Source: Macrostomum lignano
Lineage: Eukaryota
Direction: 5' to 3'
DNA length: 64,000 nt
Assembly (NCBI GenBank): GCA_002269645.1
Contig: NIVC01003234.1
Span: 1 to 64,000, forward strand
Shown: positions 1 to 42,483 of the stretch, one piece after another
Position numbering within the stretch: the first letter of the stretch is position 1
Layout: every line of letters begins with the position of its first letter
Made by a program: the position numbers and the translations under genes
The notes under the pieces: generated by a model
The model's input: the letters and a program-made list of their open reading frames with translations, nothing else
Told to the model about the DNA's origin: nothing
Databases searched by the model: none

Positions 1-204
1 GCCAAATAGAACTCATATTTTATTTATTGAATTAATAACCGTCTTTTTTGAATCAGTCCGAACTGCAGTCGTGAAACGCATTGTCAAGTTAGTGATCAAT
101 TTTATTTTTCTTGATCCAATCTTCGAAAATCCACTGAGTTTCCTCGGCAAACTCCAGTGCGAACTGTGCCATCTGGTACATAGAATCAGGACCTCCGTGA
201 TTTT

Positions 205-3200
205 TCAGTTTGGTTTTGATTTCTTCTTGTAATCACTTGCCTTCATCTGATTGCGCCTGTGCACCATGTTGCCGTAATGCGTCCAAAGGAACAGCAGGCT
301 CCTTGCTTGCGCCATGTAAACGCCTCGCGTTGTGCAAGGAAACTCAAAATGTCGTCAGTAAGCTTTATGTTGGCCTTCTGTTGAAGGGACTTTCCCTTTG
401 TGAAGAGTGTTTTGGCCAGCTGAGTTGCCTCTTCATGAGAAATTTCGCGGGCTTCTTGGCTGAACTCGGGTTTTCTTTCAAGAGGCTTTTCTTTTCCTAT
501 CCACTCCACCACGGGTTCCAGCCTGCTGGGTGTCTGAAGTACCGTCCAGTTTTCATTTGTCAATTTCAATCCATCGTTTCTGCTGGCGTGAAAATAGTTT
601 GCTGTCGCATCTTTACCATCTACCGTTGGCAGCAGTTCAACCAATCCGTCCAAGTGCTCCTTTGCCCTCTTCAATAAGTCGATTTCAAACTGAGCGGTTT
701 GGCTGCTGCTCTCTGCTGACTTGCTCGCAGCAGTGAGGGCCCTCCGTGACAGTTTCAGCCGCATTTCTCGCATAACGACGCCGCGGTCAACTGATCTCTT
801 GGACTGCTCTATGCCCAAAAACTCTTCGATTTGCTTTTTCAAGTAACTGGCAAATTTTGCATCAGACTTGATTCGCTGCTTGCCCCCCTCACCCACAGCA
901 AGGGGCAGTGACTGCAGGTAAAACCGCTGTCTTCAGAATCAGCGCAGTTCAACATCTTTGCGCACAACTCATAAGCAGCTGTGCTGAAAGGGACTCGGAA
1001 GTCCAGCTGCTCCGGATCGTCTGTCTCGTACCGCTCCGTGGTCGGGTATTTCGGCTTACCCTTTATCAGGTAGTCGAGAATTTTTAGGAAAATGTCCTTG
1101 CAGCCGAGAGACACGAACTCCTGCAAGTTTTCAATGTTCAACTCATTTTCTTGACCCAAAATCTGCGTTAGTATCCACTCAGCCTTCACGCGCTTCTCTG
1201 GCAGCGAAGCGTTTTCATTCACGAGGTCAAGAAAATACCGTTTCGAGTCGTGAGGGACTTCAGTCTTGCGGTCAAGCAGCGACCTGCACAGATGGAAGCG
1301 GGCAAATCGCCCGTGTTCTGCGCTGAACTCAGTGGCATCTGGATTCAAAAGAGCTTTTTCGTAGACATTCTCAAATTCTTGTCGAATTCGCATCAAAGCT
1401 TTAGGTTTCAACTGAGATTTGAAGTATTTCCATTCGTCACTGCGGTCATTTATTTTATTTCTTAAGTAATTCGGTGTTTCAATTCGCCAGAAAAGGGTCT
1501 CAACTCTCTTCTTAGGTTCATTTGGTCTTGGTGAGTGGTGTAGGAACCAGAATGCGAGACTCTCGTCGGTCTTGATGCTAAAAGTCTGCCAGAACCAAGC
1601 AAGTTGAAGCTCGTCCAGATTTTTTTCATCTTTTGCAGCTGCGACCTTCGATTCAATATAGTTAATCTCCATTGGGTAAAACTTATGAGTGCAGTCTGGG
1701 TGAAGTTCCACCGCTCTGTAAAGTGTCCGCCATCCTTCCAGTGGCTTTTTGGCGAAGCAAATTTGATAGTGGCCTTTCCGAACAAGAACTTCAGCCATAA
1801 CAGATATTTTTTGGCTAAATCTCGTTGCGCTTTCATCGTACAACCGCTCGATGAAATCAGCATTATCATCGCCATCAATTTTGCTTTCCAAGTTAATGAT
1901 TTTAATCAATAGAAACTCCGACATCCAATTTCTCTGCCCGTCGGGCAATTCCTTCAATTTGCTTTTGGCGGCTGCAAATTTCTCTTTTGCTTCATCATGA
2001 CGTTTTTCCCCTTTCAATTCTTTTGCCTCAGTAAATAGCTGATCCGCTTCCATGTAATAATTTTTGCTTGCGTCTTTCAGAGCTTCCTTCACTTCATCTG
2101 CATTGTCAGTCAATCCAAGATTACGAAATACTCTTTGACAGAGATCGAATGCCTTTTTCACAGATTCGATATCGACTTCGCCTTTCATAGAAAAGGCTTC
2201 TTTAGCCAGTCGGTAGCTAAGATGCGGACGACCTGCAGTTTTGGGATTCTGAAATTCTCCAGCCTCACTTTCATCATCATCTTCCATTCCGGAGTGAGAA
2301 TCCTCTGTTTTCTGCTTTCCGTCGCGGCGAATTTCTGCCCAGATTTTTTCGGCCTCTTTCCCATTGCTTTCCTCTGCAGTGAAATTGATGAGAGCGAAGG
2401 CACAGCTGGCTAGAAAGTGGCACCTGGTGACTGGATCAGCTGGTCGAAGTCCATAAGCCAGCGCCCACAAGCGGATCTCGTACTGGTTTGGCTTCATAAT
2501 AAAGCGAGTGTCTCGCCTGATTATCGCCACTGCGTTGGCTTCGCCGAACAGAGCGGAGAGATTCTTGTTTCCGGTGAGTTTATTTGCTTTTCTACATACA
2601 GCAGCAGCCTTCTGGAGAAATTTGCGACCGAAATGGCGGTAGGACAGCGCCTCCACAATCCAGCTGTGGACCAACATTCGCTCGGACTCTGCATCCTCAG
2701 TCGCTGTCTTTTGAGCTCCTTTTGAGCTTTCTTGCTTCTTTTCACTAGCCCTCCTCATAGCATCGGTCCACTTGTGATGAAGCGCGAACCACTCTTCACT
2801 CAACTCCCTCATCGGACAGCCGCGCTGCCGGCGGATCCACAGTCGCAGAGCATCAACGATAAATTTGCAATCGAGAATTTCGTCAACCGGTTGATTCACT
2901 TCAGCTGAGGTGTCACTGCCGCTGCTGCTGCCGCAGTCAATTTGCATGCCTTCGTACTGATCTTCCTCTGCGGACGCAGCTGTTTCTGAAGGACTCTCTT
3001 GACTTCTGGAACAAATTTGTTCAGCAAGTTTCAGATGTTCTTCTGCTTTTTTGTAATCGACTTTAAAGGTCGGCCGCGTGTATAAATAAGCGATGATGGT
3101 GTGATATGCTGATCTGTTGAGCGGGTCGGATTTGATTTTCTCCTCGGCAGTTTCAATATAGCCTGCGCACTTCTCCGGGCTGATAAATTCCTCGCTCAGC

Positions 3201-3237
3201 CACAAAAACTGGCACTGAAGCTCTGGCAGCGATTCGT
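205..3237 (-). CDS. IFIT-like TPR protein, main large exon (~1010 codons); apparent 1-nt deletions at ~930 and ~317 join ORFs 839..3205, 243..896 and a final frame ending at TGA 205-207
   Basis: Reading upstream of the ORF call gives ESLPELQCQFLW, then YHTIIAYLY..YKKAEEHLKLAEQI, EALSYRHFGRKFLQKAAAVCRKA and LAYGLRPADPVTRCHFLA. These are collinear with the IFIT5-type motifs LELECHFTW, YNLLAYVK..ALECLEQAEEII, KGWALLKFGGKYYQKAKAAFEKA and AVTLNPDNSYIKVFLA (recalled, aligned by eye). Pyrimidine-rich acceptor ttttctgcttccag ends at 3238. Confidence 0.7.
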
Positions 3238-3350
3238 CTGGAAGCAGAAAATGTTGTTTGTTTATTGTTTGTAGTTTGTAAATGCGATTTAATGCTTGCT
3301 TGCATGACCAGGATTACAGGGTTACCGCCTCCATTTTTTGGGGCGGTGCC

Positions 3351-3890
3351 TACATAGGGCTGGCTGTGGGATCAGTGACTGCATGGGGCTGGCTGTGGGA
3401 TCAGTGACTGCATGGGGCTGGCTGTGGGATCAGTGACTGCATGGGGCTGGCTGTGGGATCAGTGACTGCATGGGGCTGGCTGTGGGATCAGTGACTACAT
3501 AGGGCTGGCTGTGGGATCAGTGACTACATAGGGCTGGCTGTGGGATCAGTGACTGCATGGGGCTGGCTGTGGGATCAGTGACTGCATCGGGCTGGCTGTG
3601 GGATCAGTGACTGCATGGGGCTGACTGTGGGATCAGTGACTGCATGGGGCCGGCTGTGGGATCAGTGACTGCATGGGGCTGGCTGTGGGATCATTGACTG
3701 CATGGGGCTGGCTGTGGGATCATTGACTGCATGGGGCTGGCTGTGGGATCATTGACTGCATGGGGCTGGCTGTGGGATCAGTGACTGCATGGGGCTGGCT
3801 GTGGGATCATTGACTGCATGGGGCTGGCTGTGGGATCATTGACTGCATGGGGCTGGCTGTGGGATCAGTGACTGCATTGGGCTGGCTGTG
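3351..3890. repeat. 29-bp tandem repeat (ggggctggctgtgggatcagtgactgcat), intronic in the IFIT-like gene
   Basis: About 18 visible copies. Confidence 0.95.
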
Positions 3891-3932
3891 CATGGAAGTA
3901 AAGCAGGATAAAAAAGAAAATTGAGAACTTAC

Positions 3933-4621
3933 AGCTGAACTCATTGATGCTAACTTTGCTTTTCGTGTCGATATGGATTTCTTTCTTCTCGGTATTCTCA
4001 ACATTGCTCTCTACCTTGAATGGTGTGCAGAAAGTTGAAGTTGAGAGCCTTTCAAATGTACATTGGGGCCATACATGAATAATGTGACAAGATCTAGCTC
4101 GTTCAATGTCAGTGTTGCGGATTGAATGTCTGTTTTCTGTAGTTCTAGCTCTTTTGTATAAGCTGATAGTCGACGTGTCAAATTGCATACGCCAACCAAT
4201 GGGATATTTACAACGATGATTTGGCAGCTTTTAGGATGACTCATAGGGGAGTTCCCCTTTTGAGAGGCTGTGCGGAAGTTCCCTTTTTCTGAGAACAATG
4301 GAGACTGTATGCGGGTTTTTCCCTGAACCCTGAACCCTGAACCCTGAACCCTGAACAATCAGGGTATGAAAGTTCTGAATTAGTCAGCCTCCTCTTCAAT
4401 TCTCTTCAGTACTCTCAAAATCACTATTGTTCTGCTCTGAATCTACACTCCTCTCTTCCCAATCTTCATCATTTAAATATTCGGCGATGGATACTACGAT
4501 TTCTCCATATTCTTCTTTTAGCTCACAAATATCATCAATTTCTAGGGGGGGGGGGATAACTTGACTTCGGTTTTATCTGAAATGGCAATTCTCTAGAAAT
4601 AGTATCAAGAGAGTCGGTCAT
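3933..4621 (-). CDS. Candidate upstream coding exon of the IFIT-like gene (several apparent indels)
   Basis: Strong donor T|GTAAGT at 3933/3932 is phase 1, matching the phase-1 acceptor at 3238 (T+AC=Tyr). ORF pieces 3865..4188 and 4011..4358 and upstream pieces (MTDSLDTISRELPFQ.., IAEYLNDEDWEER..) can be chained with 1-nt corrections. ATG at 4621. Confidence 0.4.
4321..4355. repeat. (CCCTGAA)5 heptamer microsatellite
   Basis: Five perfect copies. Confidence 0.9.
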
Positions 4622-6007
4622 TTTGAATATTTAGAATTTTTTTATTTAAAAAAAAAAAATTTTGCCATTTTTATGAAATTATTTCGATATTTTTTACACA
4701 CTGATAATGAGTTTTACAAAATCCTGGAAAAGTTTTACACGTTGAAAATGAGTTTTACAAATAATCGATACTCATTAACATGCTTCAAGAGGGGGGGTTA
4801 AGGTTATAGAAAAACTCTCCAGAATTTTTCAGTGAGTCTGCGTCAGGAGTCAGGTGACGTTACCAAAGTCCCTATGAAAATTTTTGACCCTGAAAATGTT
4901 CGACACATCAAAAAATAACTCTTTATTTAATGATTGGAATTTAAGGTTCTTAGTGGTGGCAGTGGCAGTGGCACTACCATTTGTCAAAGTAGTTGGGTTT
5001 TTATTAATGATTGGAATTTAAGGTTTTCAAGGGTAGCTGAGATCGCTACCTAGAAAATAGGGCTATTTACAAAATCAGAATAGTTTGGAAACTGCCAGTG
5101 CCACTGCCACATCTGCCACACACCTTGGGCTGCCCAAGAGTGTGTTATGGTCAGCTTCAATATATACCAATACTACTCAGGATGATGTAGAGATCAAAAG
5201 ACCTTATGAAAGACTCATTGCTAAGCAGACTGATGCGTTGGGTAAATGAACAGAGGAACATCGAATCAATGCTTTTTCTATAATCTCACCTCAAGGTTCA
5301 AGCTGTCCACATATTCCATCTATCCTGCCGACCGGACAGGAATTCTGCAGGTGCGCAAGATTAGGACTCCTAGAAAGTCAGCTCTATATAAAAATACAGC
5401 ATAGGTGTGGTGTCCTGGCATGCACTCACCTACGCCTTCTTTGTGGATGTTGGCAGTCTGGTATTAAAAAGTTTCAGACGATCCGGTGGCTCGAGATGTC
5501 ATCAAAACCAGCAGCCACGGTAAATGAAAAAGCTACGCTGCAGCGAGCGGGGCGCGTGGTTCCTTTTGTCTACTTTAGGGGCTGACACAGCAGAGACTCC
5601 AATGTAATGTAGTAAAGCAAGATGGCGAGAAGCACTTACGAGCGCTTCTTACGGGGGTCTTTCTTGCTTTGCTCTCGGCTGAGAACGAACAGAGGAGCGA
5701 CCACTGACGGAGCATAAGTCAAGGGTTTTAAAGCTAACCGCCAACCCCCCGCCCCACACCGAAGTCAGCCGCAACCCCTAGCACACATTGCACGCGGCCT
5801 ATAGCCTACAGCCGCCCACAAAGCAACACTAAACAGACGGTAATCCTCGGTGAGTCAGATGCTACATTGTTCCTTATAAACTTTCAGTTCCATGCGCCAT
5901 GGACGACTTTGATTTAAGCAACGGGACAGGAAACGAAACTATAATTATTTTATTTCTGTAACAACATGGGGCGAACTCTTACAATCGCTGGACACGCATT
6001 TTATATA

Positions 6008-7566: not shown

Positions 7567-9651
7567 GCAGCGATACTCGAAACAAACCGCCGAAGAACGT
7601 TACGCTGGCAAGACTACTGCGGTCTGGCAGGGTAAGCGCAGGCATTCCGGGGCGGAGTCAACGCGCTTTCAATGCGCGGAACGTCGCCTAATGAGGTGGA
7701 TTGAAAAACGGGAGATTGAAAAGAAGACAGGAGAGAGGAAGAGGAGAAACCCCCTCCAAGCCCGTTGCATGGTGGGTTGGCTGGCCTTGCCCGATCTGTA
7801 ACTCCGATTGCACTGGACCCACAACGCTCTCAGCCCTTATAAGCTAGATTTCGCTCTTCAGCCGTGCCACGTGCTCGAGGGCTTCTGCATGATTGGTCGG
7901 CTGATTTAAAGTCGGGGTAAACTTTAGTGGGGTGCAGACCGCGTGACCCTTCGCTGGGCCAAGCCGGTTTTCTGAAGTCGCATTTTGACCAATTCACTGA
8001 CATGTACCCTTTGTCTTAAGCTCTTAGTCTGACCTTAAAAAAAGAACAAAATATCAATAACTAATATCAAATAACAAATAGCAACAAATGATAACAAATT
8101 GCGCAAGATGCTGACACTACATACTGTACGTCCTCACATCCTTTATATAATAGTACACATGTGGGTACGTCCCAAAACTTTCATGTACGTGTAGGTCTAG
8201 TCAATATAATGCAACTCGATTTTCTATTTGGTTCCTTCTCATAACGTGAATTTTAGCTTTATCTCTGCACATCTGTATCCAGTGCTCAATTCTAATGAGT
8301 TTTACGATCAAAATACAATTTAGAGAATAGTCATGTAACTGCATTATATCGGCGGTAAGCTAGCTGGTGGTGTTATGGTGGTGATTATTAACAGTGTGAT
8401 GATTAAGGTTTAGGAGTCAAATTGAACAGAATTGTATTGAAGCTTCTTTGGGTACACTTTTATTAATGTATGTTAATATTTAAAGAAGCAAATAGGATGG
8501 ATTTTTAAGAGGAACATCGATTGAGAGGACTGGCGAATCCGAGATTGGGATGACGAATCTTACTAATCCTAAACTTTCTGAAGTCAAACCTACTGTATAT
8601 CTATATCTAGAATTTTTAAATAATAAATTTAATGTAATCTATAATACAACTTTTTACGAACTTTGGAAGTCTCTATACTATACTGTAATTAATTGTTTTA
8701 ACGATCAAATTGAGTCCGTAGTTTATTATCCGTTTTAAATGTAAATTTTTGCTCAATTATTTAAGTCAATTTTATTATGAAACCTCGTTAAATAAAACAA
8801 TAAGCTTTTACGACAATTATTATATGAGCTATATATATTAGTGGATCGACTAACACTATTCAATGTTTTATTTAGTTACATATAACAGTATTTTATCATT
8901 ATTGCTCAGGATCTTGAGTTGATCCAGAAAGGTATCAAGTTAATGGACTATAGATGCGTTTGATATTGGATCTTAGATTTATGTGTATAACATTTATATT
9001 TAATTTAATATCGGTTATATTTTTAAACAATTGTACGTGTCTGTTTATATTGTGTTGAAAAGTCAATCATTATCACACAATAATATTTACATTCAAGGTA
9101 AATCTATATCCAGCCTTCTGAAGTGTATAAAATGTATAGAAAAATCGAAATTATACATTTGTCTTATGCAAAAATCAATTCAGTTAATATTATATTAAAA
9201 ACACAAAAATTCAACCTAATTTATCCTGTTTAAGTTTTCAACCTCCAAACAACTGTTACTAAGTGAAGAAGGCATTTATATTAAATTTCTTATCAAAAGC
9301 TTATAAAGTGGAGCTTCATTTTGATAATATCTGAATGAGTGTGTTAATAATGACCAGCTCAAATTGTAGCCAGTGAGAACCATAAATGATAGTTGAAAGC
9401 ATCCATGATGTTGATTTTTCGTTTAATTCTTAAGTCATGATGCAGATTGGCCTTAAAAGTATTAGTATTTTTTAATTTGAATTTTGTTGTATCAAGTGTT
9501 AATAAATAATTTATTAACTATCAATTTTATTAATTTACACACTATATTTTAACAAAATAATTGTGCAGCATTGCTTATTTTTGCAAATTGTGTTTTATGT
9601 TCAAGGCTGTATAATTAATGGCACTATGATGCCTTAACTTACCTGCATGCA

Positions 9652-11839
9652 ATGGCCACAGAAGATGAGATTGAAGATGGGCCTGGAGCCGCCTACCAGG
9701 TCTTCCTCAACATGGAAGCAGTGCTTGACAACCTAAAGCTATTGGACTATGACAGGGAATATTGCAAGTAAGCAAAAAAACAGCCATATTGGAGCCAGAC
9801 TGCAGTTCATATCTGAGTCCATGAGCATTTTTCAATTGAATTTAGCAGCAATTTCACTACAAGTCACCCCTGATTTTTATAAACAGGCAGCTGCACCACA
9901 AACCCATCTCGCGGCACTACTTCGCCATGGCAACCAACTCGGGCGAGCAGTTCCACGCCTTCGGCTGCCTGGCCTCCTGGCTGGTCCGGATGGGCGGCAA
10001 AGACATGGAGGAGCCGCAGGAGTACGACGACCCCAACGCCATCGTCAGCGGCATTCTGGACGCCGTGCGCAGTCTTGGGCACAGCATCGACTTTCCGCCG
10101 AGCAAGCTGAAGTCCGGCTCGGGACCGCAGGTGGTGTACGTGCTGCTCAAGCTCTCAGAGGAGGCTCTTCAGGTGAGCGTGATCTTTTATAGCGTGAAAT
10201 AAATCGATAACTAAATCTATCAGATATAACAATCAACGCGTTTGATTCTGGCGCCGGGACCCCTAGTTTCGTGCGCGGTCGCATTAATTTGGGGCTTGTG
10301 TGCACGAAAAGATTTACACCCATGAGGGAGTTGAGCAATGGGCAGAATTGCCTCACCGCTCGCTAGCTGTGGGACGGTGTCGTCGAAGGCGTTGCGTCTG
10401 GGGCCTACAAACCTGCAATTAGTATTTTTAATAACACTTAATATTTTCTTGACTTACAAAAATGTAAAACGAGGTTACATTCTGCAGGGTAGCCAGCGAT
10501 TCTCTCTCTAGCTAAACTATGTGCGGAGAAAAACAGCAGCTATCGCTTATTTATACACCTTAGAAGCATTGAGCCAAGCTTCGAACTTCAGACAGAAGGA
10601 ACTTCCTTTCATTCAGAAATTTCATGCCTAACAGCTTTTCAGTCTTTCTGTCGGTAGATCCGGCTGCAGAGTTTCCAACCCCACCCACCCACCTGTCGCA
10701 GGTGCGCCGGTTCGTGTTCGACAAGCCGCGCTACCCGACTGACGCCGGCGAGGACCACGTCGATGTCATCGAGGACGAGTCGGAGTCGGCGGTGAAGACT
10801 CTGGACGACCAGGGCGGCGTGGCCGACGAGTTCTCCGACGACGACTTCATCGAGGATGAGGACAACGTGCCGGACGTGGACGGCCTGGCCAAGATGGCCG
10901 CCGCAGCGTCCGCGGCCGCCGGAGGCTCCCAGGGCGACGCCGTGCTGAAGCCGGAGGTGATCCTGGAGTCCAACACCGACTCCACCGAATGGATGCTGGA
11001 GGTGGAGCGGGTGCAGCCGCAGCTCAAAGTTGTTCTGCGCGCCGAGGGCAAGGACTGGCGGGTGCACCTGGACTCCATGCACCAGTATCAGAAGGCTATC
11101 GGAGACTGCTATGGACAGGTTGGTGGCCTGTCTGCCTCCGCCCCGCTCTCCCCCTCTGCTGTTCTTCTGTTCCACCGCGTCGTTTTGTCATCTTCATGGC
11201 CACATCTGACTCCATTGACTCACTGGCGCTCTTGGTCTCCTTGACCTTCACTGCCCTCCGTGCCTACCTCCCTGACTCTCCCATCACTGACACCCCAATC
11301 GCTGACTCCTCAATCGCTGACTTCTCAACCGCTGACTCCTCCATCTATGACTCCCCCATCTGTGACCCCCCATCTCTGAATCCGCAACGCTCACTCCTCG
11401 ATGCCAGGTCCAGCAGCAGCTGAAGCGCATGGAGGAGGACATCGGACGCAGTCTGGAGAAGCTGGGCAGCAGAGAGAAGTATCTCAACAGCCAGGTGGAA
11501 GGCGCGCTAAGGGAGCTCCGGGCCGCGCAGGACCGCCTGGCCGAGGCCCGCGAGCGCTACAAGCAGGCCTCCGGGGGCATCAACGACCGCGGCCGGCAGC
11601 TGCAGGAGATCTCCGAGGAGCTGGAGCGAGTGAAATCCGAGATGGAGGAGCGCGGAAACTCAATGACGGACGGCTCGCCGCTGATGCGAATCAAGAAGGC
11701 CCTGCAGCGGTTGAAGAACGAGCTCAAGGAGATGGACATCCGGGCCGGGGTCCTTCAGCACATCCTGCTGCAGACCAAACTGCGGGAGAAGACGCTGCGG
11801 GGTGCCATGGCAACCGAAGAGGCTGGCTACCTGTTCTGA
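9652..11839 (+). CDS. IFT57: Intraflagellar transport protein 57 (HIPPI); exons 9652-9767, 9887-10172, 10702-11118, 11408-11839
   Basis: GPGAAYQVF, SRHYFAM.TNSGEQF, QEYDDPNA, DFPPSKLKSG, EWMLEVERVQPQLKV, KDWRVHLDSM, LEKLGSREKYLN and SMTDGSPL match IFT57. All introns are GT-AG with consistent phases. Confidence 0.95.
10250..10415 (+). mobile_element. Diverged relative of the SINE at 17328, in IFT57 intron 2
   Basis: Shares the blocks cattaatttggggct (10282-10296) and aatgggcag..gcctc (10337-10354) with the full SINE. Confidence 0.4.
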
Positions 11840-20574: not shown

Positions 20575-21465
20575 GAGACTTGATGAATCACTTTAGACTT
20601 GATGCATCACTTTAGACTTGATGCATAACTTCAGAAACTTGACGCATCTTTTCAGACTTGATACATCACCTCAGAGACTTGATGAATCACTTTAGACTTG
20701 ATGCATAACTTCAGAAACTTGACGCATCTTTTCAGACTTGATACATCACCTCAGAGACTTGATGCATCACTTCAGAAACTTGATGCATCACTTTAGAGAC
20801 TTGATGCATCACTTCAGAGACTTGATGCATCACTTCAAAGACTTGATGCATCACTTCAGAGACTTGATGCATCACTTCAGAGACTTGATGCATCACTTCA
20901 GAGACTTGATGCATCACTTCAGAAACTTGATGCATCACTTCAGAGACTTGATGCATCACTTCAGAGACTTGATGCATCACTTCAGAGACTTGATGCATCA
21001 CTTCAGAAACTTGATGCATCACTTCAGAGACTTGATGCATCACTTCAGAGACTTGATGCATCACTTCAGAGACTTGATGCATCACTTCAGAAACTTGATG
21101 CATCACTTCAGAGACTTGATGCATCACTTCAGAAACTTGATGCATCACTTCAGAGACTTGATGCATCACTTCAGAGACTTGATGCATCACTTCAGAGACT
21201 TGATGCATCACTTCAGAAACTTGATGCATCACTTCAGAGACTTGATGCATCACTTCAGAGACTTGATGCATCACTTCAGAGACTTGATGCATCACTTCAG
21301 AAACTTGATGCATCACTTCAGAGACTTGATGCATCACTTCAGAGACTTGATGCATCACTTCAGAGACTTGATGCATCACTTCAGAAACTTGATGCATCAC
21401 TTCAGAGACTTGATGCATCACTTCAGAGACTTGATGCATCACTTCAGAGACTTGATGCATCACTT
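20575..21465. repeat. 21-bp tandem repeat (acttgatgcatcacttcagag)
   Basis: About 40 copies; source of spurious ORFs 20732.. and 20738.. Confidence 0.97.
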
Positions 21466-22204
21466 TGGAACTGGGGCAGATTGTATTGAAGACTGTCCAT
21501 TTTTGTCCTAAAATATCTTTAGCAATAGACTTGAATAGCTGGTGCGCATGTCGCACAACTCATTTGTTAATTTTTGGTCTGAAGTGCAAAAATTTTCTGT
21601 AAAGTAAAAGTCATGATAGAGTCTTTTTTTCACTTTTTTAGAATCTTTGTTGTCAAACTCTATTTTTGCTACTTCTGAGTAGGCAACTATGGAATAAATG
21701 TGTTAGTTAGTCTATCTTGATGCGCAAAACCAACTAAGCACACGTGTTTTTATCATTTTTCTTTTGTCAGTAGATGAGTATGAATGAATTAAAATATTCC
21801 TGTGACGTTTAGAGGTATTTTTTTATGCAATACCTTCAAAAAACATTTTTTGAAAATATATTTTTTAAAAATATTATTCAAAACATTTTTACGTGTCGTC
21901 CGGATGCATAAAAATCTTTATATTATTCTGTCCATATTAATTATTTTTTATAAAAGTACGCTACGTACTATCAATAGTTTTTATTGGATTCCTGTATTTG
22001 GTAACCAAGATTTTTTCTCTTAAATACCCTTTGTCCCGCTGGATTTATCAAAGTGTGTCCGCTTATTTTATTTATGCAGCTTGTTACATTCTAGAATTGA
22101 AAAGCAGCACAATTAACAACCACCTTTGCTTAACTATAAACTGTCAATATTAAACGGTTTCACTTTAACCTTGCTTTTCGAGGCTTACTTTTTTGTAGTA
22201 TGAC

Positions 22205-36700: not shown

Positions 36701-39700
36701 TATCCCAGGTGTGCTCAGACCAATATCCCAGGTGTGCTCAGACTAATATCCCAGGTGTGCTCAAACCAATATCCCAGATGTGCTCAGACCAATATCCCAG
36801 GTGTGCTCAGACCAATATCCCAGGTGTGCTCAGACCAATATCCCAGGTGTGCTCAGACCAATATGCCAGGTGTGCTCAGACCAATATCCCAGGTGTGCTC
36901 AGACCAATATCCCAGGTGTGCTCAGACCAATATCCCAGGTGTGCTCAGACCAATATCCCAGGTGTGCTCAGACCAATATCCCTGCTCCGCTTGCACCTTC
37001 GCCAAGTGAACTCAAAGTTTCCCATCTATTCAGCAGGCATAATTCCAGTTCTGCTTACCTACTAGTGAGCCCTTTCTTTATTTAATTTTTGCACCTGTGC
37101 GTCGAGTTACTCGGCTTTGTCGCTGTCTGTTTACAGCCTCTCGGGTCTGAATAAAAAACACTAAATAGAATTATTCCATTCTGGCTGCGCTCCACTGATC
37201 TTATTTACCGAGTTGGGGCTTCTTAGCTCATACAGAACTCAGCTTTTACGGCTCAGAAAGGTGGATGCTCAAGGCATAAAGGCAGATGCTTTTGTGAGAT
37301 AGGACTTGTTCCTAAATTGAATTTTCCTCATCTCTTTGCTGCATCTCAAATCAGCTGTTTTGTCAAGCAAGAATTTCCTTTCTTCAAAGCGTTCAAGTCG
37401 TGTTGAGCTTTCAGTCTGTTTGATTTAGTAGGCCACAGAATATTAACTCTGAGTAATAGTCTTGCAGGCAGCATAATTCCGTTCTTAAAGAATTTATTTA
37501 GAAATTTCGCGTGGCACGCTTTATAATTGATTTTTAGTATAGGTGGATATCGCGAGTGTCGTGTTGAATCCAAATATCTACTCAGGCAATCCAAGCTCAG
37601 CAATAGGAAAATTGAAAGAATTCTGATCAGCATCAATGCCAATCCGAATCAGCATAGAGGGAAATCACAATCAATATCAGCATCAGGATCAAGGGAAATC
37701 CCCATCAGTATCAAGGGAAATCCCAATCAGTATCAAGGGAAATCCCAATTCAGCATCAAGGGAAGTCCCAATTTAGCATCAAGAGAATGCCAGTCAACTT
37801 TTGCCCCTCCCCGCAGCGCGAGCAGGTGAAGGCGAACTCGGTGTTCCTGGACTGCGTCAAGCTGGCCCTGGAGACCCTGGTGCTCAGCCGGGCCCACAGC
37901 CGCCTGTTCCCGGCGCTGCGCGACCTCTGCGAGTCCCGCGATGCCGCCATCAACCGGGCCGCCCGGCGCAGCCTCTACGGCTTGTCCCCGGCCAGTCTGG
38001 GCATCCGGCCGGCCATGGCCGACAATCTACCGAAGGCCCGACGCCAGCTGTCCGCCCTGGCCGGCCTCACCACCCCACTGGGCAAGTGCTCCTGCCTGCG
38101 CCGCGCTGTGCTCGCCCTGGCCGGCGAGACCGGATCTTCAGCCTCGGCGTCGGCTTCAGCTTCGTCAGCGCCGATGACAGCCGACGACCTGCTGCCGTGC
38201 CTGGTGTTCCTGCTGGCCCGCTCCGAGCAGCCGGACTGGGCCGCACACATGGCCTACATGCGCCGCTTCCGGTTCGCCCGGCCGCGGAATCACGACGAGT
38301 TCGACTATTTCCTCAGCTCTCTGGAGGCCGCCATGGATTACCTGGCCACCACCTGGGCCAGCGGGCCGCCGCCGCCGCCGCCAGCGCCAACCCCGAGCGG
38401 CGGGCGTCTCAACGACGCCGACAGCCTGTGGGTGGCCGTTCGCGAAGGCGACGTGGCTCGAGCGCGCGATCTGCTGAGCCGCTGGCGCGCCTCCCGCAGC
38501 ATCGAGGCCGAGCTGGCTTCTCCAGCATCCGATGAGTCGCCTCTGGGCGGCCTGCCCGCGCTCTGCCACCCGCTGTGCCGCTGCGCCAAGTGCGAGGCCG
38601 CCCTGGCCGCCGCTCGGCTGGCCCGCCTCGGTGACGCCGAGACCGCGGCCAGCGTTGAGCAGCGGAACGAGCGGAACTGGACTCGTGAGTCCCCCGGACT
38701 GGGCAGGGAGAACTATAAGGGTCTAGAAATTCCTTGAGCTCTTCAGACACCTTCAGATTCCTGACGCTTACTGAGTTGTGGGATCTGGGGACCTTCGGAT
38801 TCTTCCTTCTATTCTAACTTCGTGTGCTGAATAGCAATTTCCCTTGAGCTGCATCCTGATGAGCACTTTAGCTCGATTGGCTTTCCTTTCGACTGTCTGT
38901 TCTGAACTCCCCAGCAGCTAATTGCGCTGGCCGCATTGCAATTAGCGCTTTTGTGGTCACGCACAGCCTCCGATCCACGTATAGGCCATAGTTTTTCATA
39001 ATCCGTTTTTTGTTTCCGTTTTCTGGCAAGCCAAAAATTCCATATTCAACCAATAATTTCAAATGTTTAGAACATGCACGTGCCTAATAACACCGGAAAA
39101 TCTGTCGTTTATAACTTGTTTAATGAAGATGATCAATTTTTTCAGGCGGCGATTTTTTCAATTTCCTGTTTCAATCTAACAGCTTCATCAAATTACTTGT
39201 AAATTTGTAGCTTCTAGCCTCGGGAGTGGCATGTAGATATTTAATTATTTTGTTATAACGGGATTTAGTTTCTAGGAAATACAGGTTCGGGAGTCGATGG
39301 TTTTTTTCTAGTTTTTTTTGTCCGTCTTGAATTAAATTTAATTAGAGTAGCTTTATTGCGTTCTGCTAAACAGACAACAGGTCGCAATATTGTGGAATAC
39401 GAATTGCCTCTCTGTGAAGTCTGTGACCGAGTTTCCCGGTTTTTTATTGCTATCCACCCGTAATTATATATTGTCCCACTCCCGGGGGACTCTTTGTTTA
39501 TCCGAGTTCGTTGGCGTTTGGCAATATTTGCGCAATGCAGTTTATTGCTGCCAGTGCGTCTGCAACGCGAGTTAGGAAGAAGCCAAAAAATGCCGTCTAA
39601 TTGGATTAGCGGTTGGCGGCTGCTTCCCAGGCTGGCAGTGGCAGCAGGCAAACCGCCAGTTCGAGCCCCAGACACATAAAATGGCTATTCGGCGCTGGCA

Positions 39701-42483
39701 ATTCTCGAGTCAGGATGGCCGAGTGGTCTAAGGCGCTGCGTTCAGGTCGCAGTCCTCTTCTGAGGGCGTGGGTTCGAATCCCACTTCTGACAAGATTTTT
39801 TTCTCTTTTTAATTAATTTTTCTACAAAAAATTTAATTAACGCCGACATATTTGCAAAGAACGTATCAAAAATTTCTTTGTTTTCAGCATCATTTTAAGA
39901 GATTTTCCAATTTTATTCATTTTTTAGCAAAATGTGTATTTGAAGCCATTTTAATAAACAATTTTTTGGTGCCAGCCGATATGTTTCGAAAATTACATTA
40001 TAGAGCGGGAATTTGTATATGCAAGAAAATATTGGAAATAACTTCCAATCAACTCCCACCCATGATTCACAGCGCTGCACTGCGCCGCATTCTATGGCCA
40101 TCTCGAGGTCGTGCAGCTGCTGCTGGACTCCGGCGCCGACCCCTGCGCCCTGGACTTCTCAGGCGCCACCGGCCTTCACCTGGCCGCCATGAACGGCCAC
40201 CACGAGGTTTGCCTGCTGCTGCTTCACAGCGGCTGCGACCTCTCGCTGCTGGACTGCGAAGGCATGGCGCCGCTGCACTACGGCGCAGACCGCGGCAGTC
40301 TGGAGGTGGCCCAGGCCCTGGCCTTCAACCCCAGCTGCAACGTGAGCATCCGCACTGCCGTCACCGAGGACACCCCGCTGCACATGGCGGCCAGGTGGAG
40401 CTACCGCCAGATCGTCGCCTTCCTGGTCTCCTGCGGCGCCGATCCGCGCACCGTCAATCGGCGCGGCCAGGCGCCGTCCGGCGTAGCCGCCAGCCCGCAC
40501 GTGGTCGAACTCCTGGCCACCGCAGCGGCCAACGCCGCCAACAGCCGACGACCGAAGGCGGCTTCGCAGGCAGCGGCGACGCCAACGGTCGCTAAAAAAC
40601 CCGAGGCCGAGCGGCCGCCGCGGCCGCCATCGCCGGCTCCGGTCCAGCCGAAACAGCCGACGTCGCCGCGTCGCCCTTCGTCTCTGTCGTCGTCCAGGAT
40701 GTCGGCGCCGCCGCAGTCTGAGCCCGCCGGCCTCCAGCAGCAGCAGCAGCGCGTGGAGAAGATGCTCCGCGCGGCTGCCGACGGCGACATCCAGCTGGTG
40801 CGGCACTACCTCGGCCTGCCGCCTGGCGGCGCGGACAACGAAGCCGACGAGGACGTCGACGCCGATCTGGACGGAGCGTCGTCGGCGACGGCCACCGAGG
40901 CCTCGGAAGAGGCGGTGGCTCCGTCACCCAGCAGCCTGTGCCACCCGCTGTGCCAGTGCCACCGCTGCGCCCCACTGCAGACCGCCGCAGCCGCTTCCTC
41001 GCCGTTCGACGCCAGCGGCCGCAGCTCCGCCGCCCCGGCGCCGCCCGCACTGACGGTGAATTCGGCCAGCAGCGACGGCTTCACCCTGCTGCACGTGGCC
41101 GCCATCCACGGCCACACCCGGCTGGCCGGCTTTGCGCTGGACCGCCGGGCCGCCCCGGACTGCCGCACCCGCGCCGGCGGCTTCACGCCCGTCCACTTCG
41201 CCTGCCAGCACAGCCGGCCGCAGGCGCTGCGCTTCCTGCTGCACCGGGGCTGCGACCCGGCCGCCAGGGACAACCAGGGCAACACGCCGCTGCATTTGTG
41301 CGCCATGAAGGGCCACGTGGACTGCGCCAGCGTCATCTTGGAGGTGAGCAGACTGCTCATTGCTTTGCCTCTGCTTTATAGTACACATTGTACTTTTCCC
41401 GTTCAACCTAGACAGCCACTGTTCAATCTAGAGGCAGCCACTGTTCAATCTAGAGACAGCCACTGTTCAAACTAGAGACAGCCACTGTTCAAACTAGAGA
41501 CAGCCACTGTTCAATCTAGAGACAGCCACTGTTCAATCTAGAGACAGCCACTGTTCAATCTAGAGACAGCCACTGTTCAATCTAGAGACAGCCACTGTTC
41601 AATCTAGAGACAGCCACTGTTGAATCTAGAGACAGCCACTGTTCAATCTAGAGACAGCCACTGTTCAATCTAGAGACAGCCACTGTTCAATCTAGAGACA
41701 GCCACTGTTCAATCTAGAGACAGCCACTGTTCAAACTAGAGACAGCCACTGTTCAATCTAGAGACAGCCACTGTTCAATCTAGAGACAGCCACTGTTCAA
41801 TCTAGAGGCAGCCGCTGTTCAATTTAGACAGTTTTATCAAAATTGAGCAAAAAATGCCTATCAATTTTCGTCAGTAGTATGAATCGCGTGTTAATTTTAT
41901 TTATTCCCCCCACCGCCGCCGCCCAGACCGGGCCGGCCTGGCTGGTGAACTCGGTGAACGGCCGCGGCAACAGCCCGCTGCACGAGGCTGCCCGCGCTGC
42001 TACCCGGCCATGTGCGACCTGCTGCTGCGCCACGGCGCCACGCCCGACCAGCGCAACCGCCAGCAGCTGGCGCCCTATCAGCTGACCGGCGATCCGCAGG
42101 TCCTCGGCATGCTGCGCCGCCGTCCGGAAGCTGCGCCAGCCTCGCCGACGCTGCGAGCACAGCTGGCAGGCGCTGCGGCTGCCGCAGACCTGGAGACCGA
42201 GGCCCGCAGCTCTTCCGGTGTGGGCCCGAGCCCGCCCTCCTCCCTGCTCGACTTCACCCTCACGCCGTCCTCCTCGCTGCTCACCGACCAGCCGCTGCCG
42301 CCGCCGCGGTCGCAGGATGACGAATCGTCCGTGTCGGGCAACGCCGAGGACGACGGCGACGCCAATGGCGACGAGGACGGCGGCGAGAAGCGGCGCTCAG
42401 CGGCGGAGCTGTGCCGGCCGCGGCCAGCCGACTACAAGCTGACGTTCTCGTCCGACTGCGACAGCCCGCAGCACGCGGCCTGA
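33787..42483 (+). CDS. ANKRD27: ANKRD27/VARP (VPS9 domain plus ankyrin repeats); exons 33787-33942, 35085-35207, 35854-36269, 37817-38684, 40073-41343, 41927-42483; apparent 1-nt deletions at ~36018 and ~41998
   Basis: YDEDLSENPFF N-terminus, VPS9 motifs ADDLLPCLVFLL and YFLSSLEAAMDY, two Zn 'fingernail' motifs CHPLCRCAKC and CHPLCQCHRC, and two ankyrin blocks. Splice phases are consistent. Confidence 0.92.
33960..34850. repeat. 35-bp tandem repeat (gggatctgtctggttcaggctgtctgcctgctgca), ANKRD27 intron 1
   Basis: About 25 copies starting right after the donor. Confidence 0.95.
35320..35755. repeat. GA-rich 17-bp repeat (gatgagtgagagtgaga), ANKRD27 intron 2
   Basis: Direct inspection. Confidence 0.9.
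36320..36982. repeat. 23-bp tandem repeat (agaccaatatcccaggtgtgctc), ANKRD27 intron 3
   Basis: About 28 copies. Confidence 0.95.
39709..39792 (+). tRNA. tRNA-Leu(CAG), in ANKRD27 intron 4
   Basis: GTCAGGATGGCCGAGTGGTCTAAGGCGCTGCGTTCAGGTCGCAG..GCGTGGGTTCGAATCCCACTTCTGACA: class II cloverleaf, anticodon loop ttCAGgt, and a T-run terminator just downstream. Confidence 0.97.
41405..41825. repeat. 22-bp tandem repeat (agagacagccactgttcaatct), ANKRD27 intron 5
   Basis: About 19 copies. Confidence 0.95.

What the first reader, a model, noticed from the sequence alone, without database searches (positions are those of the whole stretch)
205..3237. Giant IFIT-like protein in an invertebrate genome
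Seen: the first ~300 aa carry four collinear motifs matching IFIT N-terminal TPRs (LQCQFLW vs LECHFTW; YHTIIAYLY vs YNLLAYV; FGRKFLQKA vs FGGKYYQKA; LRPADP..HFLA vs LNPDN..VFLA), with acidic insertions between them. Almost the whole CDS lies in one large exon, as in vertebrate IFITs. Established: IFITs are interferon-induced binders of 5'-ppp/cap0 viral RNA, classically described in jawed vertebrates and ~450-490 aa long. Inference: this is a roughly double-length IFIT-family RNA sensor in an invertebrate, hinting at an uncharacterised antiviral pathway.
Basis: partly seen in the sequence, partly recalled or inferred. Interest (0 to 1): 0.8.

Follow-up and report, generated by a model that had tools for sequence, protein, structure and literature searches.

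The report
Flatworm giant protein with IFIT-like head
This is an intact Macrostomum lignano (flatworm) gene for a 1,085-residue all-helical protein; its N-terminal half belongs to a small flatworm family distantly related to vertebrate IFIT antiviral RNA-binding proteins, which are thought to exist only in jawed vertebrates, but this copy lacks the RNA-binding residues and its function is untested.

Summary
The window is Macrostomum lignano contig NIVC01003234.1:1-64000. The gene lies on the minus strand (89-5319). It has three coding exons, and 97% of the CDS is in the last one (3237-89).

Its three frameshifts are one-base homopolymer differences from an otherwise identical copy (0 substitutions in 1,641 nt). 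They are most likely assembly errors, so the gene is probably intact (1,085 aa, PAA53315.1).

On its own, the window protein shows no significant similarity to IFITs and no Pfam TPR hit. It is, however, the most divergent of four M. lignano paralog groups. The other three start with a literal LECHFTW, the signature invariant in IFITs.
- A family profile aligns in register with an IFIT profile (P=2.5e-9 over residues 5-173). Off-register alignments are not significant.
- An IFIT HMM finds two paralogs at E~4e-5 on a proteome scale.
- An AF2 model of paralog P0002 (pLDDT 75) has IFIT5 and IFIT1 as its top PDB matches, but TM is only ~0.4.

The RNA-binding residues are mostly not conserved (K150, Y250, R253, R260, H287, Q288). 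A ~350-aa family-specific C-terminal domain is added. No ISRE is present.

Verdict: a distant IFIT relationship is supported for the family. The RNA-sensor role is not supported. This is a new variant of a known kind.

The parts
5290..5319 (-). Coding exon 1 (MEYVDSLNLE), followed by a GTGAGA donor
   Evidence: Translation and junction sequence. Matches residues 1-10 of P0001/P0005.
3933..4014 (-). Coding exon 2 (VESNVENTEKKEIHIDTKSKVSINEFS plus 1 nt), with a CAG acceptor and GTAAGT donor
   Evidence: tblastn of P0001 residues 9-37; junctions read.
3346..3890 (.). 29-bp minisatellite (18.8 copies, 96% matches) inside intron 2 (3932-3238)
   Evidence: Tandem Repeats Finder.
89..3237 (-). Coding exon 3: residues 38-1085 plus the stop codon TAA (91-89). 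In this assembly copy it is read in three frames because of three one-base indels.
   Evidence: The acceptor is ttctgcttccag|AC at 3237.
1130..3237 (-). N-terminal IFIT-like, TPR-type helical region (P0005 residues 38-740), interrupted by lineage-specific insertions
   Evidence: Collinear with the paralogs' residues 1-500. The paralogs have Pfam TPR hits above cutoff. hhalign against IFIT. All-helical prediction.
3200..3220 (-). LQCQFLW, the diverged counterpart of the IFIT L-x-CHFTW signature (C, F and W kept; H->Q, T->L)
   Evidence: CHFTW is invariant in 103 of 105 IFITs, with gaps in the other two, and is described as invariant in PMC11462223.
3080..3106 (-). YHTIIAYLY, aligned with IFIT5 LYNLLAYV (first TPR helix)
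2606..2632 (-). FGRKFLQKA, aligned with IFIT5 helix alpha7 F151-G152-G-K-Y-Y156. The preceding His (2635-2633) takes the place of IFIT5 K150.
   Evidence: Paralog P0014 alone aligns 137-188 to IFIT 136-187 at P=4.8e-5.
2408..2449 (-). LRPADPVTRCHFLA, aligned with IFIT5 LNPDNSYIKVFLA (low-confidence part of the alignment)
2855..3013 (-). Acidic Ser-rich insertion (residues 113-165, net charge -10), absent from the paralogs and from IFITs
   Evidence: Alignment A4; charge; pLDDT <50.
89..1129 (-). C-terminal family-specific helical domain (residues ~741-1085; conserved YELCA, DRG..MR, EFAEET motifs) with no counterpart in IFITs
   Evidence: Alignments A1 and A3. No PDB or Pfam match for the window protein.
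924..925 (-). Frameshift site 1: GG here, GGG in the otherwise identical copy L003
   Evidence: DNA alignment A5; coordinates.
295..295 (-). Frameshift site 2: G here, GG in L003
229..229 (-). Frameshift site 3: C here, CC in L003

Best explanation
The locus is the M. lignano gene Mlig010163, in the copy on contig NIVC01003234.1. It is most likely an intact gene whose three apparent frameshifts are long-read homopolymer assembly errors. It encodes a 1,085-aa all-alpha protein with two parts.

(1) An N-terminal TPR-type solenoid of about 700 aa. This is a diverged, insertion-bearing version of a ~500-aa module found in four M. lignano paralog groups (Mlig010163, Mlig030191, Mlig006963, Mlig031348). 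The first ~175-200 residues of that module are homologous to vertebrate IFIT subdomain I and the start of subdomain II. The homologous stretch includes the CHFTW loop and helix alpha7, which that loop is reported to contact in IFITs.

(2) A ~350-aa helical C-terminal domain that is specific to the flatworm family.

Inferred mechanism: the IFIT-like 'latch' (the CHFTW loop packing on the F-G-x-x-x-Y helix) holds the N-terminal helices against the solenoid and so forms a ligand groove. The C-terminal domain adds a family-specific partner or effector function. The groove's IFIT-type RNA 5'-end contacts are largely replaced, most completely in this copy. I therefore expect this paralog to act as a TPR scaffold or ligand clamp with a specificity different from the ppp/cap0-RNA binding of IFITs.

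Shown: the gene model, the intactness argument, family membership, and the in-register profile and fold similarity to IFITs. Inferred: common ancestry with IFITs, the latch/groove architecture, and the ligand type.
For: Source and gene model.

Intactness: 0 substitutions and only one-base homopolymer indels across 1,641 nt against copy L003.

Family:
- Exhaustive phmmer against 1.84e9 representatives finds only M. lignano proteins.
- Cluster members and names. Collinear full-length alignments.
- tblastn of P0002 residues 5-87 against window 3235-2996 gives 40% identity, E=1e-9.

TPR nature: P0002 scores TPR_2 38.6 bits, with TPR_14 and TPR_19 also above cutoff; P0014 has TPR_1 and TPR_19.

IFIT relationship:
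- hhalign of the family against 105 IFITs gives Prob 94.7, P=5.7e-8, with 5-476 aligned to 11-475.
- Residues 1-175 alone give P=2.5e-9 in register, and every off-register alternative has P>0.01.
- With CHFTW masked, the best alignment is still in register (score 24.5, against column shuffles of 15.2+-2.5, maximum 21.1). P0014 alone gives P=4.8e-5 for 137-188 against 136-187.
- IFIT HMM at Z=50,000: P0014 E=4.3e-5 and P0002 E=4.6e-5, spanning HMM positions 12-198.
- The AF2 model of P0002 1-501 used an MSA of flatworm paralogs only (pLDDT 75, pTM 0.65). Its top five PDB hits out of 350,542 chains are IFIT5 and IFIT1 (E=4.4e-7 to 2.9e-6). The CHFTW segment itself is low-confidence in that model, so this ranking does not depend on the motif.
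- CHFTW is invariant in IFITs and is reported to contact alpha7 (PMC11462223).
Against: - The window protein alone shows no significant similarity to IFITs and no Pfam TPR hit. Its IFIT link is transitive, through its paralogs.
- Beyond about residue 200 the sequence signal is at generic TPR background (P~0.01-0.02).
- Fold-match TM-scores are only 0.39-0.44, and generic TPR proteins follow within 10-100 fold in E-value.
- The window protein's own model is unusable (pLDDT 42).
- The profile is built from only four sequences.
- Most IFIT5 RNA-contact residues are not conserved.
- No relatives were found outside M. lignano, so the phylogenetic path to IFITs is unknown. Ancient inheritance with loss, transfer, and motif convergence cannot be told apart.
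Confidence: 0.68

Rival explanations
1. Functional IFIT analogue. The flatworm family, possibly including this copy, binds the 5' ends of non-self RNA (ppp or unmethylated cap) in a TPR clamp and acts in interferon-independent antiviral defence.
For: - In-register homology to the IFIT N-terminal module, which forms one wall of the RNA pocket.
- IFIT5 Y156 and R186 equivalents are retained in three paralogs, and F337 and D334 equivalents in all four.
- R186/D188 align as conserved in the window protein under alignments A1 and A2.
- Paralog P0002 carries a C-terminal RGG/GRGGSEHFR repeat tail, a motif type common in RNA-binding proteins (that last point is from my own knowledge).
- IFIT5 and IFIT1 are the top fold matches.
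Against: - K150, invariant in all 105 IFITs and the strongest ppp contact, is Cys in the paralogs and His here.
- Q41, Y250, R253, Y254, R260, H287 and Q288 are not conserved or fall in gaps (residue list from PMC9677429).
- The window copy also loses H and T of CHFTW, and Y156.
- No ISRE in the window.
- No induction or binding data exist, and no literature mentions these genes.
Confidence: 0.17
2. Generic TPR scaffold unrelated to IFITs. On this view the CHFTW-like string and the other motifs are chance or convergence on a helical-repeat background.
For: - The window protein alone is not significantly similar to IFITs.
- TPR proteins often cross-match, and generic TPRs (TTC7B, CTPR, SPINDLY, OGT, Tom71) are close behind IFITs in Foldseek E-value, with similar TM.
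- Liu et al. 2013 found that the invertebrate 'IFIT-like' BLAST hits were generic TPR proteins (PMC3688568).
Against: - An exact 8-residue match (ELECHFTW), rich in rare residues, sits at the same N-terminal position in P0002 and IFIT5. P0013 and P0014 share LECHFTW.
- A second, independent in-register segment gives P=4.8e-5.
- Motif spacing is almost the same: 10/53/151 against 16/58/151.
- Off-register alignments are not significant, which is the opposite of what generic repeat similarity predicts.
- Column shuffles reach at most 21, against an observed score of 68.
Confidence: 0.1
3. This particular copy is a decaying pseudogene, and the frameshifts are real.
For: The deposited assembly has three frame-breaking one-base deletions, and NCBI annotated only a truncated 601-aa product, P0006.
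Against: - There are zero substitutions against copy L003 across 1,641 nt, including the 3' UTR.
- All the differences are homopolymer length changes.
- L003 has an indel of the same kind of its own near the stop codon.
- This pattern is what long-read consensus error produces, not decay.
Confidence: 0.05

Closest known systems
Vertebrate IFIT5 / IFIT1 (PDB 4HOR, 4HOQ, 5UDK, 5W5I)
   Same: - N-terminal L-x-C-H-F-T-W signature: literal in three paralogs, CQFLW here.
- The L-A-Y helix and the F-G-x-x-x-Y alpha7 helix follow at nearly identical spacing.
- Both are all-alpha TPR solenoids of about 480-500 residues.
- IFIT5 and IFIT1 are the best PDB fold matches for the paralog model.
- Most of the CDS is in one exon.
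   Different: - Only ~15-17% identity.
- Sequence signal is confined to the first ~200 residues.
- The RNA-contact residues K150, Q41, Y250, R253, Y254, R260, H287 and Q288 are not conserved.
- An extra ~350-aa C-terminal domain and internal acidic insertions bring the length to 1,085 aa, against 450-490.
- The exon structure is different.
- The host has no known interferon system (established knowledge), and no ISRE is present.
Generic TPR scaffolds (OGT/SPINDLY TPR domains, TTC7B, Tom70/71, APC/C subunits, Ctr9)
   Same: Helical-repeat solenoid. Pfam TPR_1/2/8/14/19 hits occur in the paralogs at residues ~308-500. These proteins are the next-best fold matches.
   Different: They have no N-terminal CHFTW module. 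In the profile comparison only the in-register IFIT alignment is significant. The window protein itself has no Pfam TPR hit.
Zebrafish IFIT5A (an IFIT with a long, non-conserved C-terminal extension, residues 509-773, per Liu et al. 2013)
   Same: It is a precedent for an IFIT core followed by a long extra C-terminal region (PMC3688568).
   Different: It is a bona fide vertebrate IFIT. Its extension was not compared with the flatworm C-terminal domain here.

Membership tests
[quoted passage not shown] | Invariant CHFTW pentapeptide in loop L1 near the N-terminus | tested here: not met
   The window protein has C-Q-F-L-W, 3 of 5. Paralogs P0002, P0013 and P0014 have the exact CHFTW. The motif is invariant in 103 of 105 IFITs, with gaps in the other two, and is described as invariant in PMC11462223.
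[quoted passage not shown] | Significant sequence or profile similarity to IFITs | tested here: inconclusive
   Window protein alone: none. Its family: hhalign P=2.5e-9 for 5-173 against 11-173, and IFIT HMM E~4e-5 at Z=50,000 for two paralogs. The signal is limited to about the first 200 residues.
[quoted passage not shown] | Clamp of three TPR subdomains around a central RNA channel | tested here: inconclusive
   The P0002 model (pLDDT 75) has IFIT5 and IFIT1 as top PDB hits over ~520 columns, but TM is 0.39-0.44 and rmsd ~12 A. The window protein model has pLDDT 42. No coordinates were available to inspect a channel.
[quoted passage not shown] | Conserved RNA 5'-end contact residues (IFIT5 Q41, K150, Y156, R186, Y250, R253, Y254, R260, H287, Q288) | tested here: not met
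   In the order P0002/P0013/P0014/window: K150 -> C/C/C/H; Q41 -> V/V/V/Y; Y156 -> Y/Y/Y/L; R186 -> R/R/R, and alignment-dependent in the window copy (I, R under A1 and A2). Y250, R253, Y254, R260, H287 and Q288 are not conserved or fall in gaps, in a low-confidence part of the alignment. Residue list from PMC9677429.
[quoted passage not shown] | Size ~450-490 aa, consisting of the TPR array only | tested here: not met
   1,085 aa, with insertions and a ~350-aa extra C-terminal domain.
[quoted passage not shown] | Two-exon gene: exon 1 is ATG plus 2 nt, exon 2 is the rest | tested here: not met
   Three coding exons (30 nt, 82 nt, 3,149 nt including the stop). The introns follow codon 10 and lie within codon 38. 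Paralog P0002 has a single coding exon. Only the 'one giant exon' aspect is shared (PMC3688568).
[quoted passage not shown] | Interferon or virus inducibility through ISRE promoter elements | tested here: not met
   There are 0 matches to GAAANNGAAAST in the whole 64-kb window. Actual induction cannot be tested with these tools.
[quoted passage not shown] | Phylogenetic placement within the IFIT clade (jawed vertebrates) | not tested
   No tree was built; at ~16% identity and with no intermediate taxa it would not be informative. The host is a platyhelminth.
TPR superfamily (Pfam TPR_1/2/8/14/19) | Matches to TPR repeat models above the curated cutoffs | tested here: inconclusive
   Window protein: no TPR hit even at E<=10. 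The collinear paralogs P0002 and P0014 have several hits above cutoff at residues ~308-498. The prediction is all-helical.
Macrostomum lignano Mlig010163 / 030191 / 006963 / 031348 paralog family (uncharacterised) | Collinear full-length similarity, including the N-terminal L-x-C-x-F-x-W...AYL...FG module and the C-terminal YELCA...DRG..MR...EFAEET domain | tested here: met
   phmmer of P0001 against P0002 gives E=1.2e-17. See alignments A1, A3 and A4 with their invariant columns, and tblastn of the paralogs against the window.

The most novel reading that the evidence does not exclude
IFIT-type proteins did not arise with interferon in jawed vertebrates. On this reading the flatworm family is a surviving protostome branch of an ancient IFIT lineage. 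Its CHFTW-bearing members bind non-self RNA 5' ends in an interferon-independent antiviral pathway, and the C-terminal domain acts as a built-in effector or signalling module.
Probability: 0.15. Interest if true: 0.85.

Novelty: new variant of a known kind. Interest (0 to 1): 0.6.

Why it matters
IFITs are textbook interferon effectors. They are held to have arisen together with interferon in jawed vertebrates and have not been reported in lower animals (PMC3688568; PMC11462223).

A flatworm family carries the literal CHFTW signature, shows in-register profile similarity, and has IFIT5 and IFIT1 as best fold matches. That points to one of two things. Either the N-terminal IFIT module is much older than interferon, or it was acquired or re-invented in a protostome.

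Either way the question becomes testable in a tractable model, because M. lignano has RNAi and transgenesis (my own knowledge). The question is what an IFIT-like clamp does in an animal without interferon, and what the appended C-terminal domain adds.

For this particular gene the claim is more modest. It is the most diverged paralog, and probably not an RNA 5'-end binder of the IFIT type.

Tried and rejected
- **Pfam on the window protein and on intact P0001/P0005:** nothing above cutoff and no TPR hit. The UniRef name 'Suf domain-containing protein' could not be reproduced.
- **PDB sequence searches:** phmmer with the window protein returned only a chance FF-domain hit at E=0.018. hmmsearch with a 3-sequence family profile returned nothing and no IFIT. 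HMMER is not sensitive enough in this direction.
- **blastp against verified IFIT1:** not significant.
- **Homologs outside M. lignano:** exhaustive phmmer of P0001, a k-mer/HMM search with the N-terminal alignment and a JGI metagenome scan found none.
- **AF2 of the full-length window protein:** pLDDT 42. Its Foldseek list is not meaningful (Ctr9 first, IFIT5 at rank 5, TM ~0.1).
- **BFVD viral fold library:** only generic giant-virus TPR/Sel1 proteins, so nothing suggests a viral origin.
- **Net charge and pI of the domains:** not discriminating.
- **ISRE scan:** no sites.
- **Literature:** no paper mentions these gene IDs or IFIT-like genes in flatworms or molluscs. One broad search was uninformative.
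- **Pfam as a test of 'IFIT versus generic TPR':** Pfam has no IFIT-specific model, since IFIT5 itself matches only generic TPR families. It therefore cannot rank the two.
- **Sandbox access to L003:** the locus was not available to scripts. Only the 3' 1.6 kb was compared, using DNA alignment.
Full report
**What is in the sequence**

The finding lies on the minus strand. A six-frame translation of window 1-4200 shows one long reading frame from about 3270 down to 839. It then continues in two other frames down to about 90.

The only close database match is Macrostomum lignano A0A1I8HQL3 (P0001, 1,075 aa, 97% identity). A look-up of the truncated product P0006 placed it on GCA_002269645.1 contig NIVC01003234.1 at 839-2644. 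Those are the window's own coordinates, so the window is that contig's first 64 kb.

tblastn and junction reading give the gene model:
- Exon 1: 5319-5290, encoding MEYVDSLNLE.
- Exon 2: 4014-3933.
- Intron 2: 695 nt, containing a 29-bp x 18.8 minisatellite.
- Exon 3: 3237-89, which holds 1,048 of the 1,085 codons.

I verified my recalled IFIT1 and IFIT5 sequences as 100% identical to PDB 5W5H and to P0015.

**The frameshifts are assembly errors, not decay**

I aligned window 60-1700 with the copy that encodes the intact 1,085-aa protein P0005 (L003, contig NIVC01003103.1). There were no substitutions in 1,641 nt. The only differences were four one-base homopolymer-length changes. Three are in the window (GG/GGG at 924-925, G/GG at 295, C/CC at 229). 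One is in L003 near the stop codon.

That pattern is typical of long-read consensus error. The frames that P0001 and P0005 join are also the ones conserved in the paralogs.

**The window protein alone does not look like an IFIT**

- Pfam gives no TPR hit or any other hit above cutoff.
- phmmer against all PDB sequences gives no IFIT.
- blastp against IFIT1 gives E=1.9 for the collinear N-terminal alignment.
- hhalign of the single sequence against 105 IFITs gives P=0.15.
- An IFIT HMM gives E=810.

**The paralogs change the picture**

An exhaustive phmmer search of 1.84 billion representatives found only M. lignano proteins. The cluster look-up and a second search defined four paralog groups:
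- Mlig010163, the window gene.
- Mlig030191 (P0002, 1,062 aa).
- Mlig006963 (P0013, 877 aa).
- Mlig031348 (P0014, 921 aa).

They are collinear over their full length. The window's N-terminus matches P0002 residues 5-87 at 40% identity, E=1e-9.

The other three groups begin M-x-x-L-x-x-L-(E/D)-(E/Q)-L-E-C-H-F-T-W. P0002 shares the eight residues ELECHFTW with IFIT5, and P0013 and P0014 share LECHFTW. CHFTW is described as invariant in all IFITs, sitting in loop L1 and contacting helix alpha7 (PMC11462223). It is invariant in my 105-sequence IFIT alignment, apart from two gapped sequences.

The spacing of L-x-C-x-F-x-W, A-Y-L and F-G is 10/53/151 in P0002 and 16/58/151 in IFIT5. P0002 and P0014 also have Pfam TPR hits above the curated cutoffs at residues ~308-498.

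**Statistical tests of the IFIT relationship**

A profile of the four N-terminal halves against a profile of 105 amniote IFITs gave Prob 94.7 and P=5.7e-8. Query 5-476 aligned to IFIT5 11-475.

The signal is N-terminal and in register:
- Residues 1-100 give P=2e-8.
- Residues 1-175 give P=2.5e-9, with 5-173 aligned to 11-173.
- Residues 176-520 alone give P=0.017.
- Every off-register alternative has P>0.01.

Generic repeat-to-repeat similarity would produce good off-register alignments. It does not here.

With the CHFTW segment removed, the best alignment is still the in-register one (44-173 against 49-173). It scores 24.5, against column shuffles of 15.2+-2.5 with a maximum of 21.1. P0014 alone aligns 137-188 to IFIT 136-187 at P=4.8e-5, a second segment that does not depend on the motif.

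In the reverse direction, an IFIT HMM with filters off and Z=50,000 finds P0014 at E=4.3e-5 and P0002 at E=4.6e-5. Single domains span HMM positions 12-198. P0013 scores E=0.91.

**Structure**

AF2 on the full-length window protein with a 4-sequence MSA failed (pLDDT 42). It shows only that the protein is all-helical with disordered insertions. Its fold matches are not meaningful.

AF2 on P0002 1-501, using only flatworm paralogs in the MSA, gave pLDDT 75 and pTM 0.65. Against 350,542 PDB chains the top five hits were IFIT5 (4HOR, 4HOQ, 4HOT) and IFIT1 (5UDK, 5W5I), at E=4.4e-7 to 2.9e-6 over ~520 columns. Behind them came TTC7B, consensus TPRs, SPINDLY, OGT, Tom71 and APC/C subunits.

Residues 1-24, which include CHFTW, are low-confidence in this model, so the ranking does not rest on the motif. 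TM-scores are only 0.39-0.44, however. The IFIT clamp cannot be claimed.

The viral structure library gave only generic giant-virus TPR proteins.

**Function**

I took the mutationally defined IFIT5 RNA-contact residues from PMC9677429, Table 5, and mapped them through the profile alignment:
- K150, invariant in 105 of 105 IFITs, is Cys in the three CHFTW paralogs and His in the window protein.
- Q41 is Val in the paralogs and Tyr in the window protein.
- Y156 is kept in the paralogs but is Leu here.
- R186 is kept in the paralogs. In the window protein it depends on the alignment (Ile; Arg under A1 and A2).
- Y250, R253, Y254, R260, H287 and Q288 are not conserved or fall in gaps. That part of the alignment is unreliable.

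There is no ISRE anywhere in the window. The C-terminal ~350 residues form a domain conserved in the family (YELCA, DRG..MR, EFAEET motifs). The window protein's version has no PDB or Pfam match. P0014 has a DUF1722 hit there at 29 bits.

What is conserved, then, is the structural 'latch' of IFITs: the CHFTW loop plus the alpha7 F-G helix. The ligand-contact chemistry is not conserved.

My best reading is a TPR clamp or scaffold that shares ancestry with the IFIT N-terminal module but has a different specificity, or at least an unproven one. The window gene is the most diverged member: CQFLW, three or more insertions, and Y156 lost. IFIT-type RNA 5'-end binding remains possible for the CHFTW paralogs, and P0002 also has an RGG-repeat tail. 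It is unlikely for this copy.

**Comparison with what is known, and novelty**

Liu et al. 2013 found IFITs only in jawed vertebrates and showed that invertebrate BLAST hits were generic TPR proteins (PMC3688568). A 2024 paper states that IFITs have not been reported from lower animals (PMC11462223). I found no paper on these M. lignano genes or on IFIT-like genes in flatworms or molluscs. Pfam has no IFIT-specific model.

The family fails several IFIT-defining features: size, exon structure, RNA-contact residues, and for this copy the literal motif. I therefore do not file the gene as an IFIT. I file it as a new variant of a known kind: an IFIT-related N-terminal module in a double-length protostome protein.

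**Limits**

- The family profile has four sequences.
- P0002 and P0014 could not be searched exhaustively.
- No intermediate taxa are known.
- No coordinates were available to inspect a channel.
- All functional statements are inferences.

Noticed in passing
window 3346-3890: A 29-bp minisatellite (consensus GTGACTGCATGGGGCTGGCTGTGGGATCA, 18.8 copies, 96% matches) fills most of intron 2 of the gene.
   Followed up: partly
P0002 residues ~960-1040 (L001 ~8900-9378); P0014 C-terminus: Paralog P0002 ends in an RGG-rich tail with about six tandem GRGGSEHFR repeats, a motif type common in RNA-binding proteins. P0014 ends in GEATGVQA repeats. The window gene has neither tail.
   Followed up: no
P0014 residues 649-734; P0013 residues 670-740 (equivalent to about window 600-900): The family's C-terminal domain hits Pfam DUF1722 (a prokaryotic domain of unknown function) at 29.2 bits in P0014, above the 22.5 cutoff, and at 17.4 bits in P0013. 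It does not hit in the window protein or in P0002.
   Followed up: no
L003 (NIVC01003103.1), about 8205-8215, equivalent to window ~100: The 'intact' copy has its own homopolymer indel (A5 against A4) just before the stop codon. The annotated P0005 therefore ends KKNKN, whereas the window, P0001 and P0007 end KKNKIDH.
   Followed up: yes
UniRef cluster of P0001, and cluster members P0008, P0010, P0011: Database names attached to this family look unreliable. 'Suf domain-containing protein' is not reproduced by Pfam. A 4,203-aa 'AMP deaminase' and a 'BTB/POZ' protein sit in the same 90% clusters and are probably fused or mis-clustered gene models.
   Followed up: partly
window 1-89: The gene's stop codon is only 89 nt from the start of the contig. 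The 3' UTR and any downstream neighbour are therefore cut off by the assembly.
   Followed up: no
window 10624-11244 (+); 37787-41475 (+): Neighbouring coding sequence includes an IFT57 exon (84.5 bits) and a gene with a VPS9 domain followed by ankyrin repeats (Ank_2, 134 bits). No immune-type genes were seen nearby.
   Followed up: partly
window 20732-21556 and 52964-54598: Long ORFs on both strands hit dozens of unrelated Pfam coiled-coil or low-complexity families, so they look like repetitive, compositionally biased sequence. GC content swings from 29% to 66% across the window.
   Followed up: no
window 4321-4356: A perfect 7-bp tandem repeat (CCCTGAA x 5.1) lies in intron 1 of the gene.
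   Followed up: no
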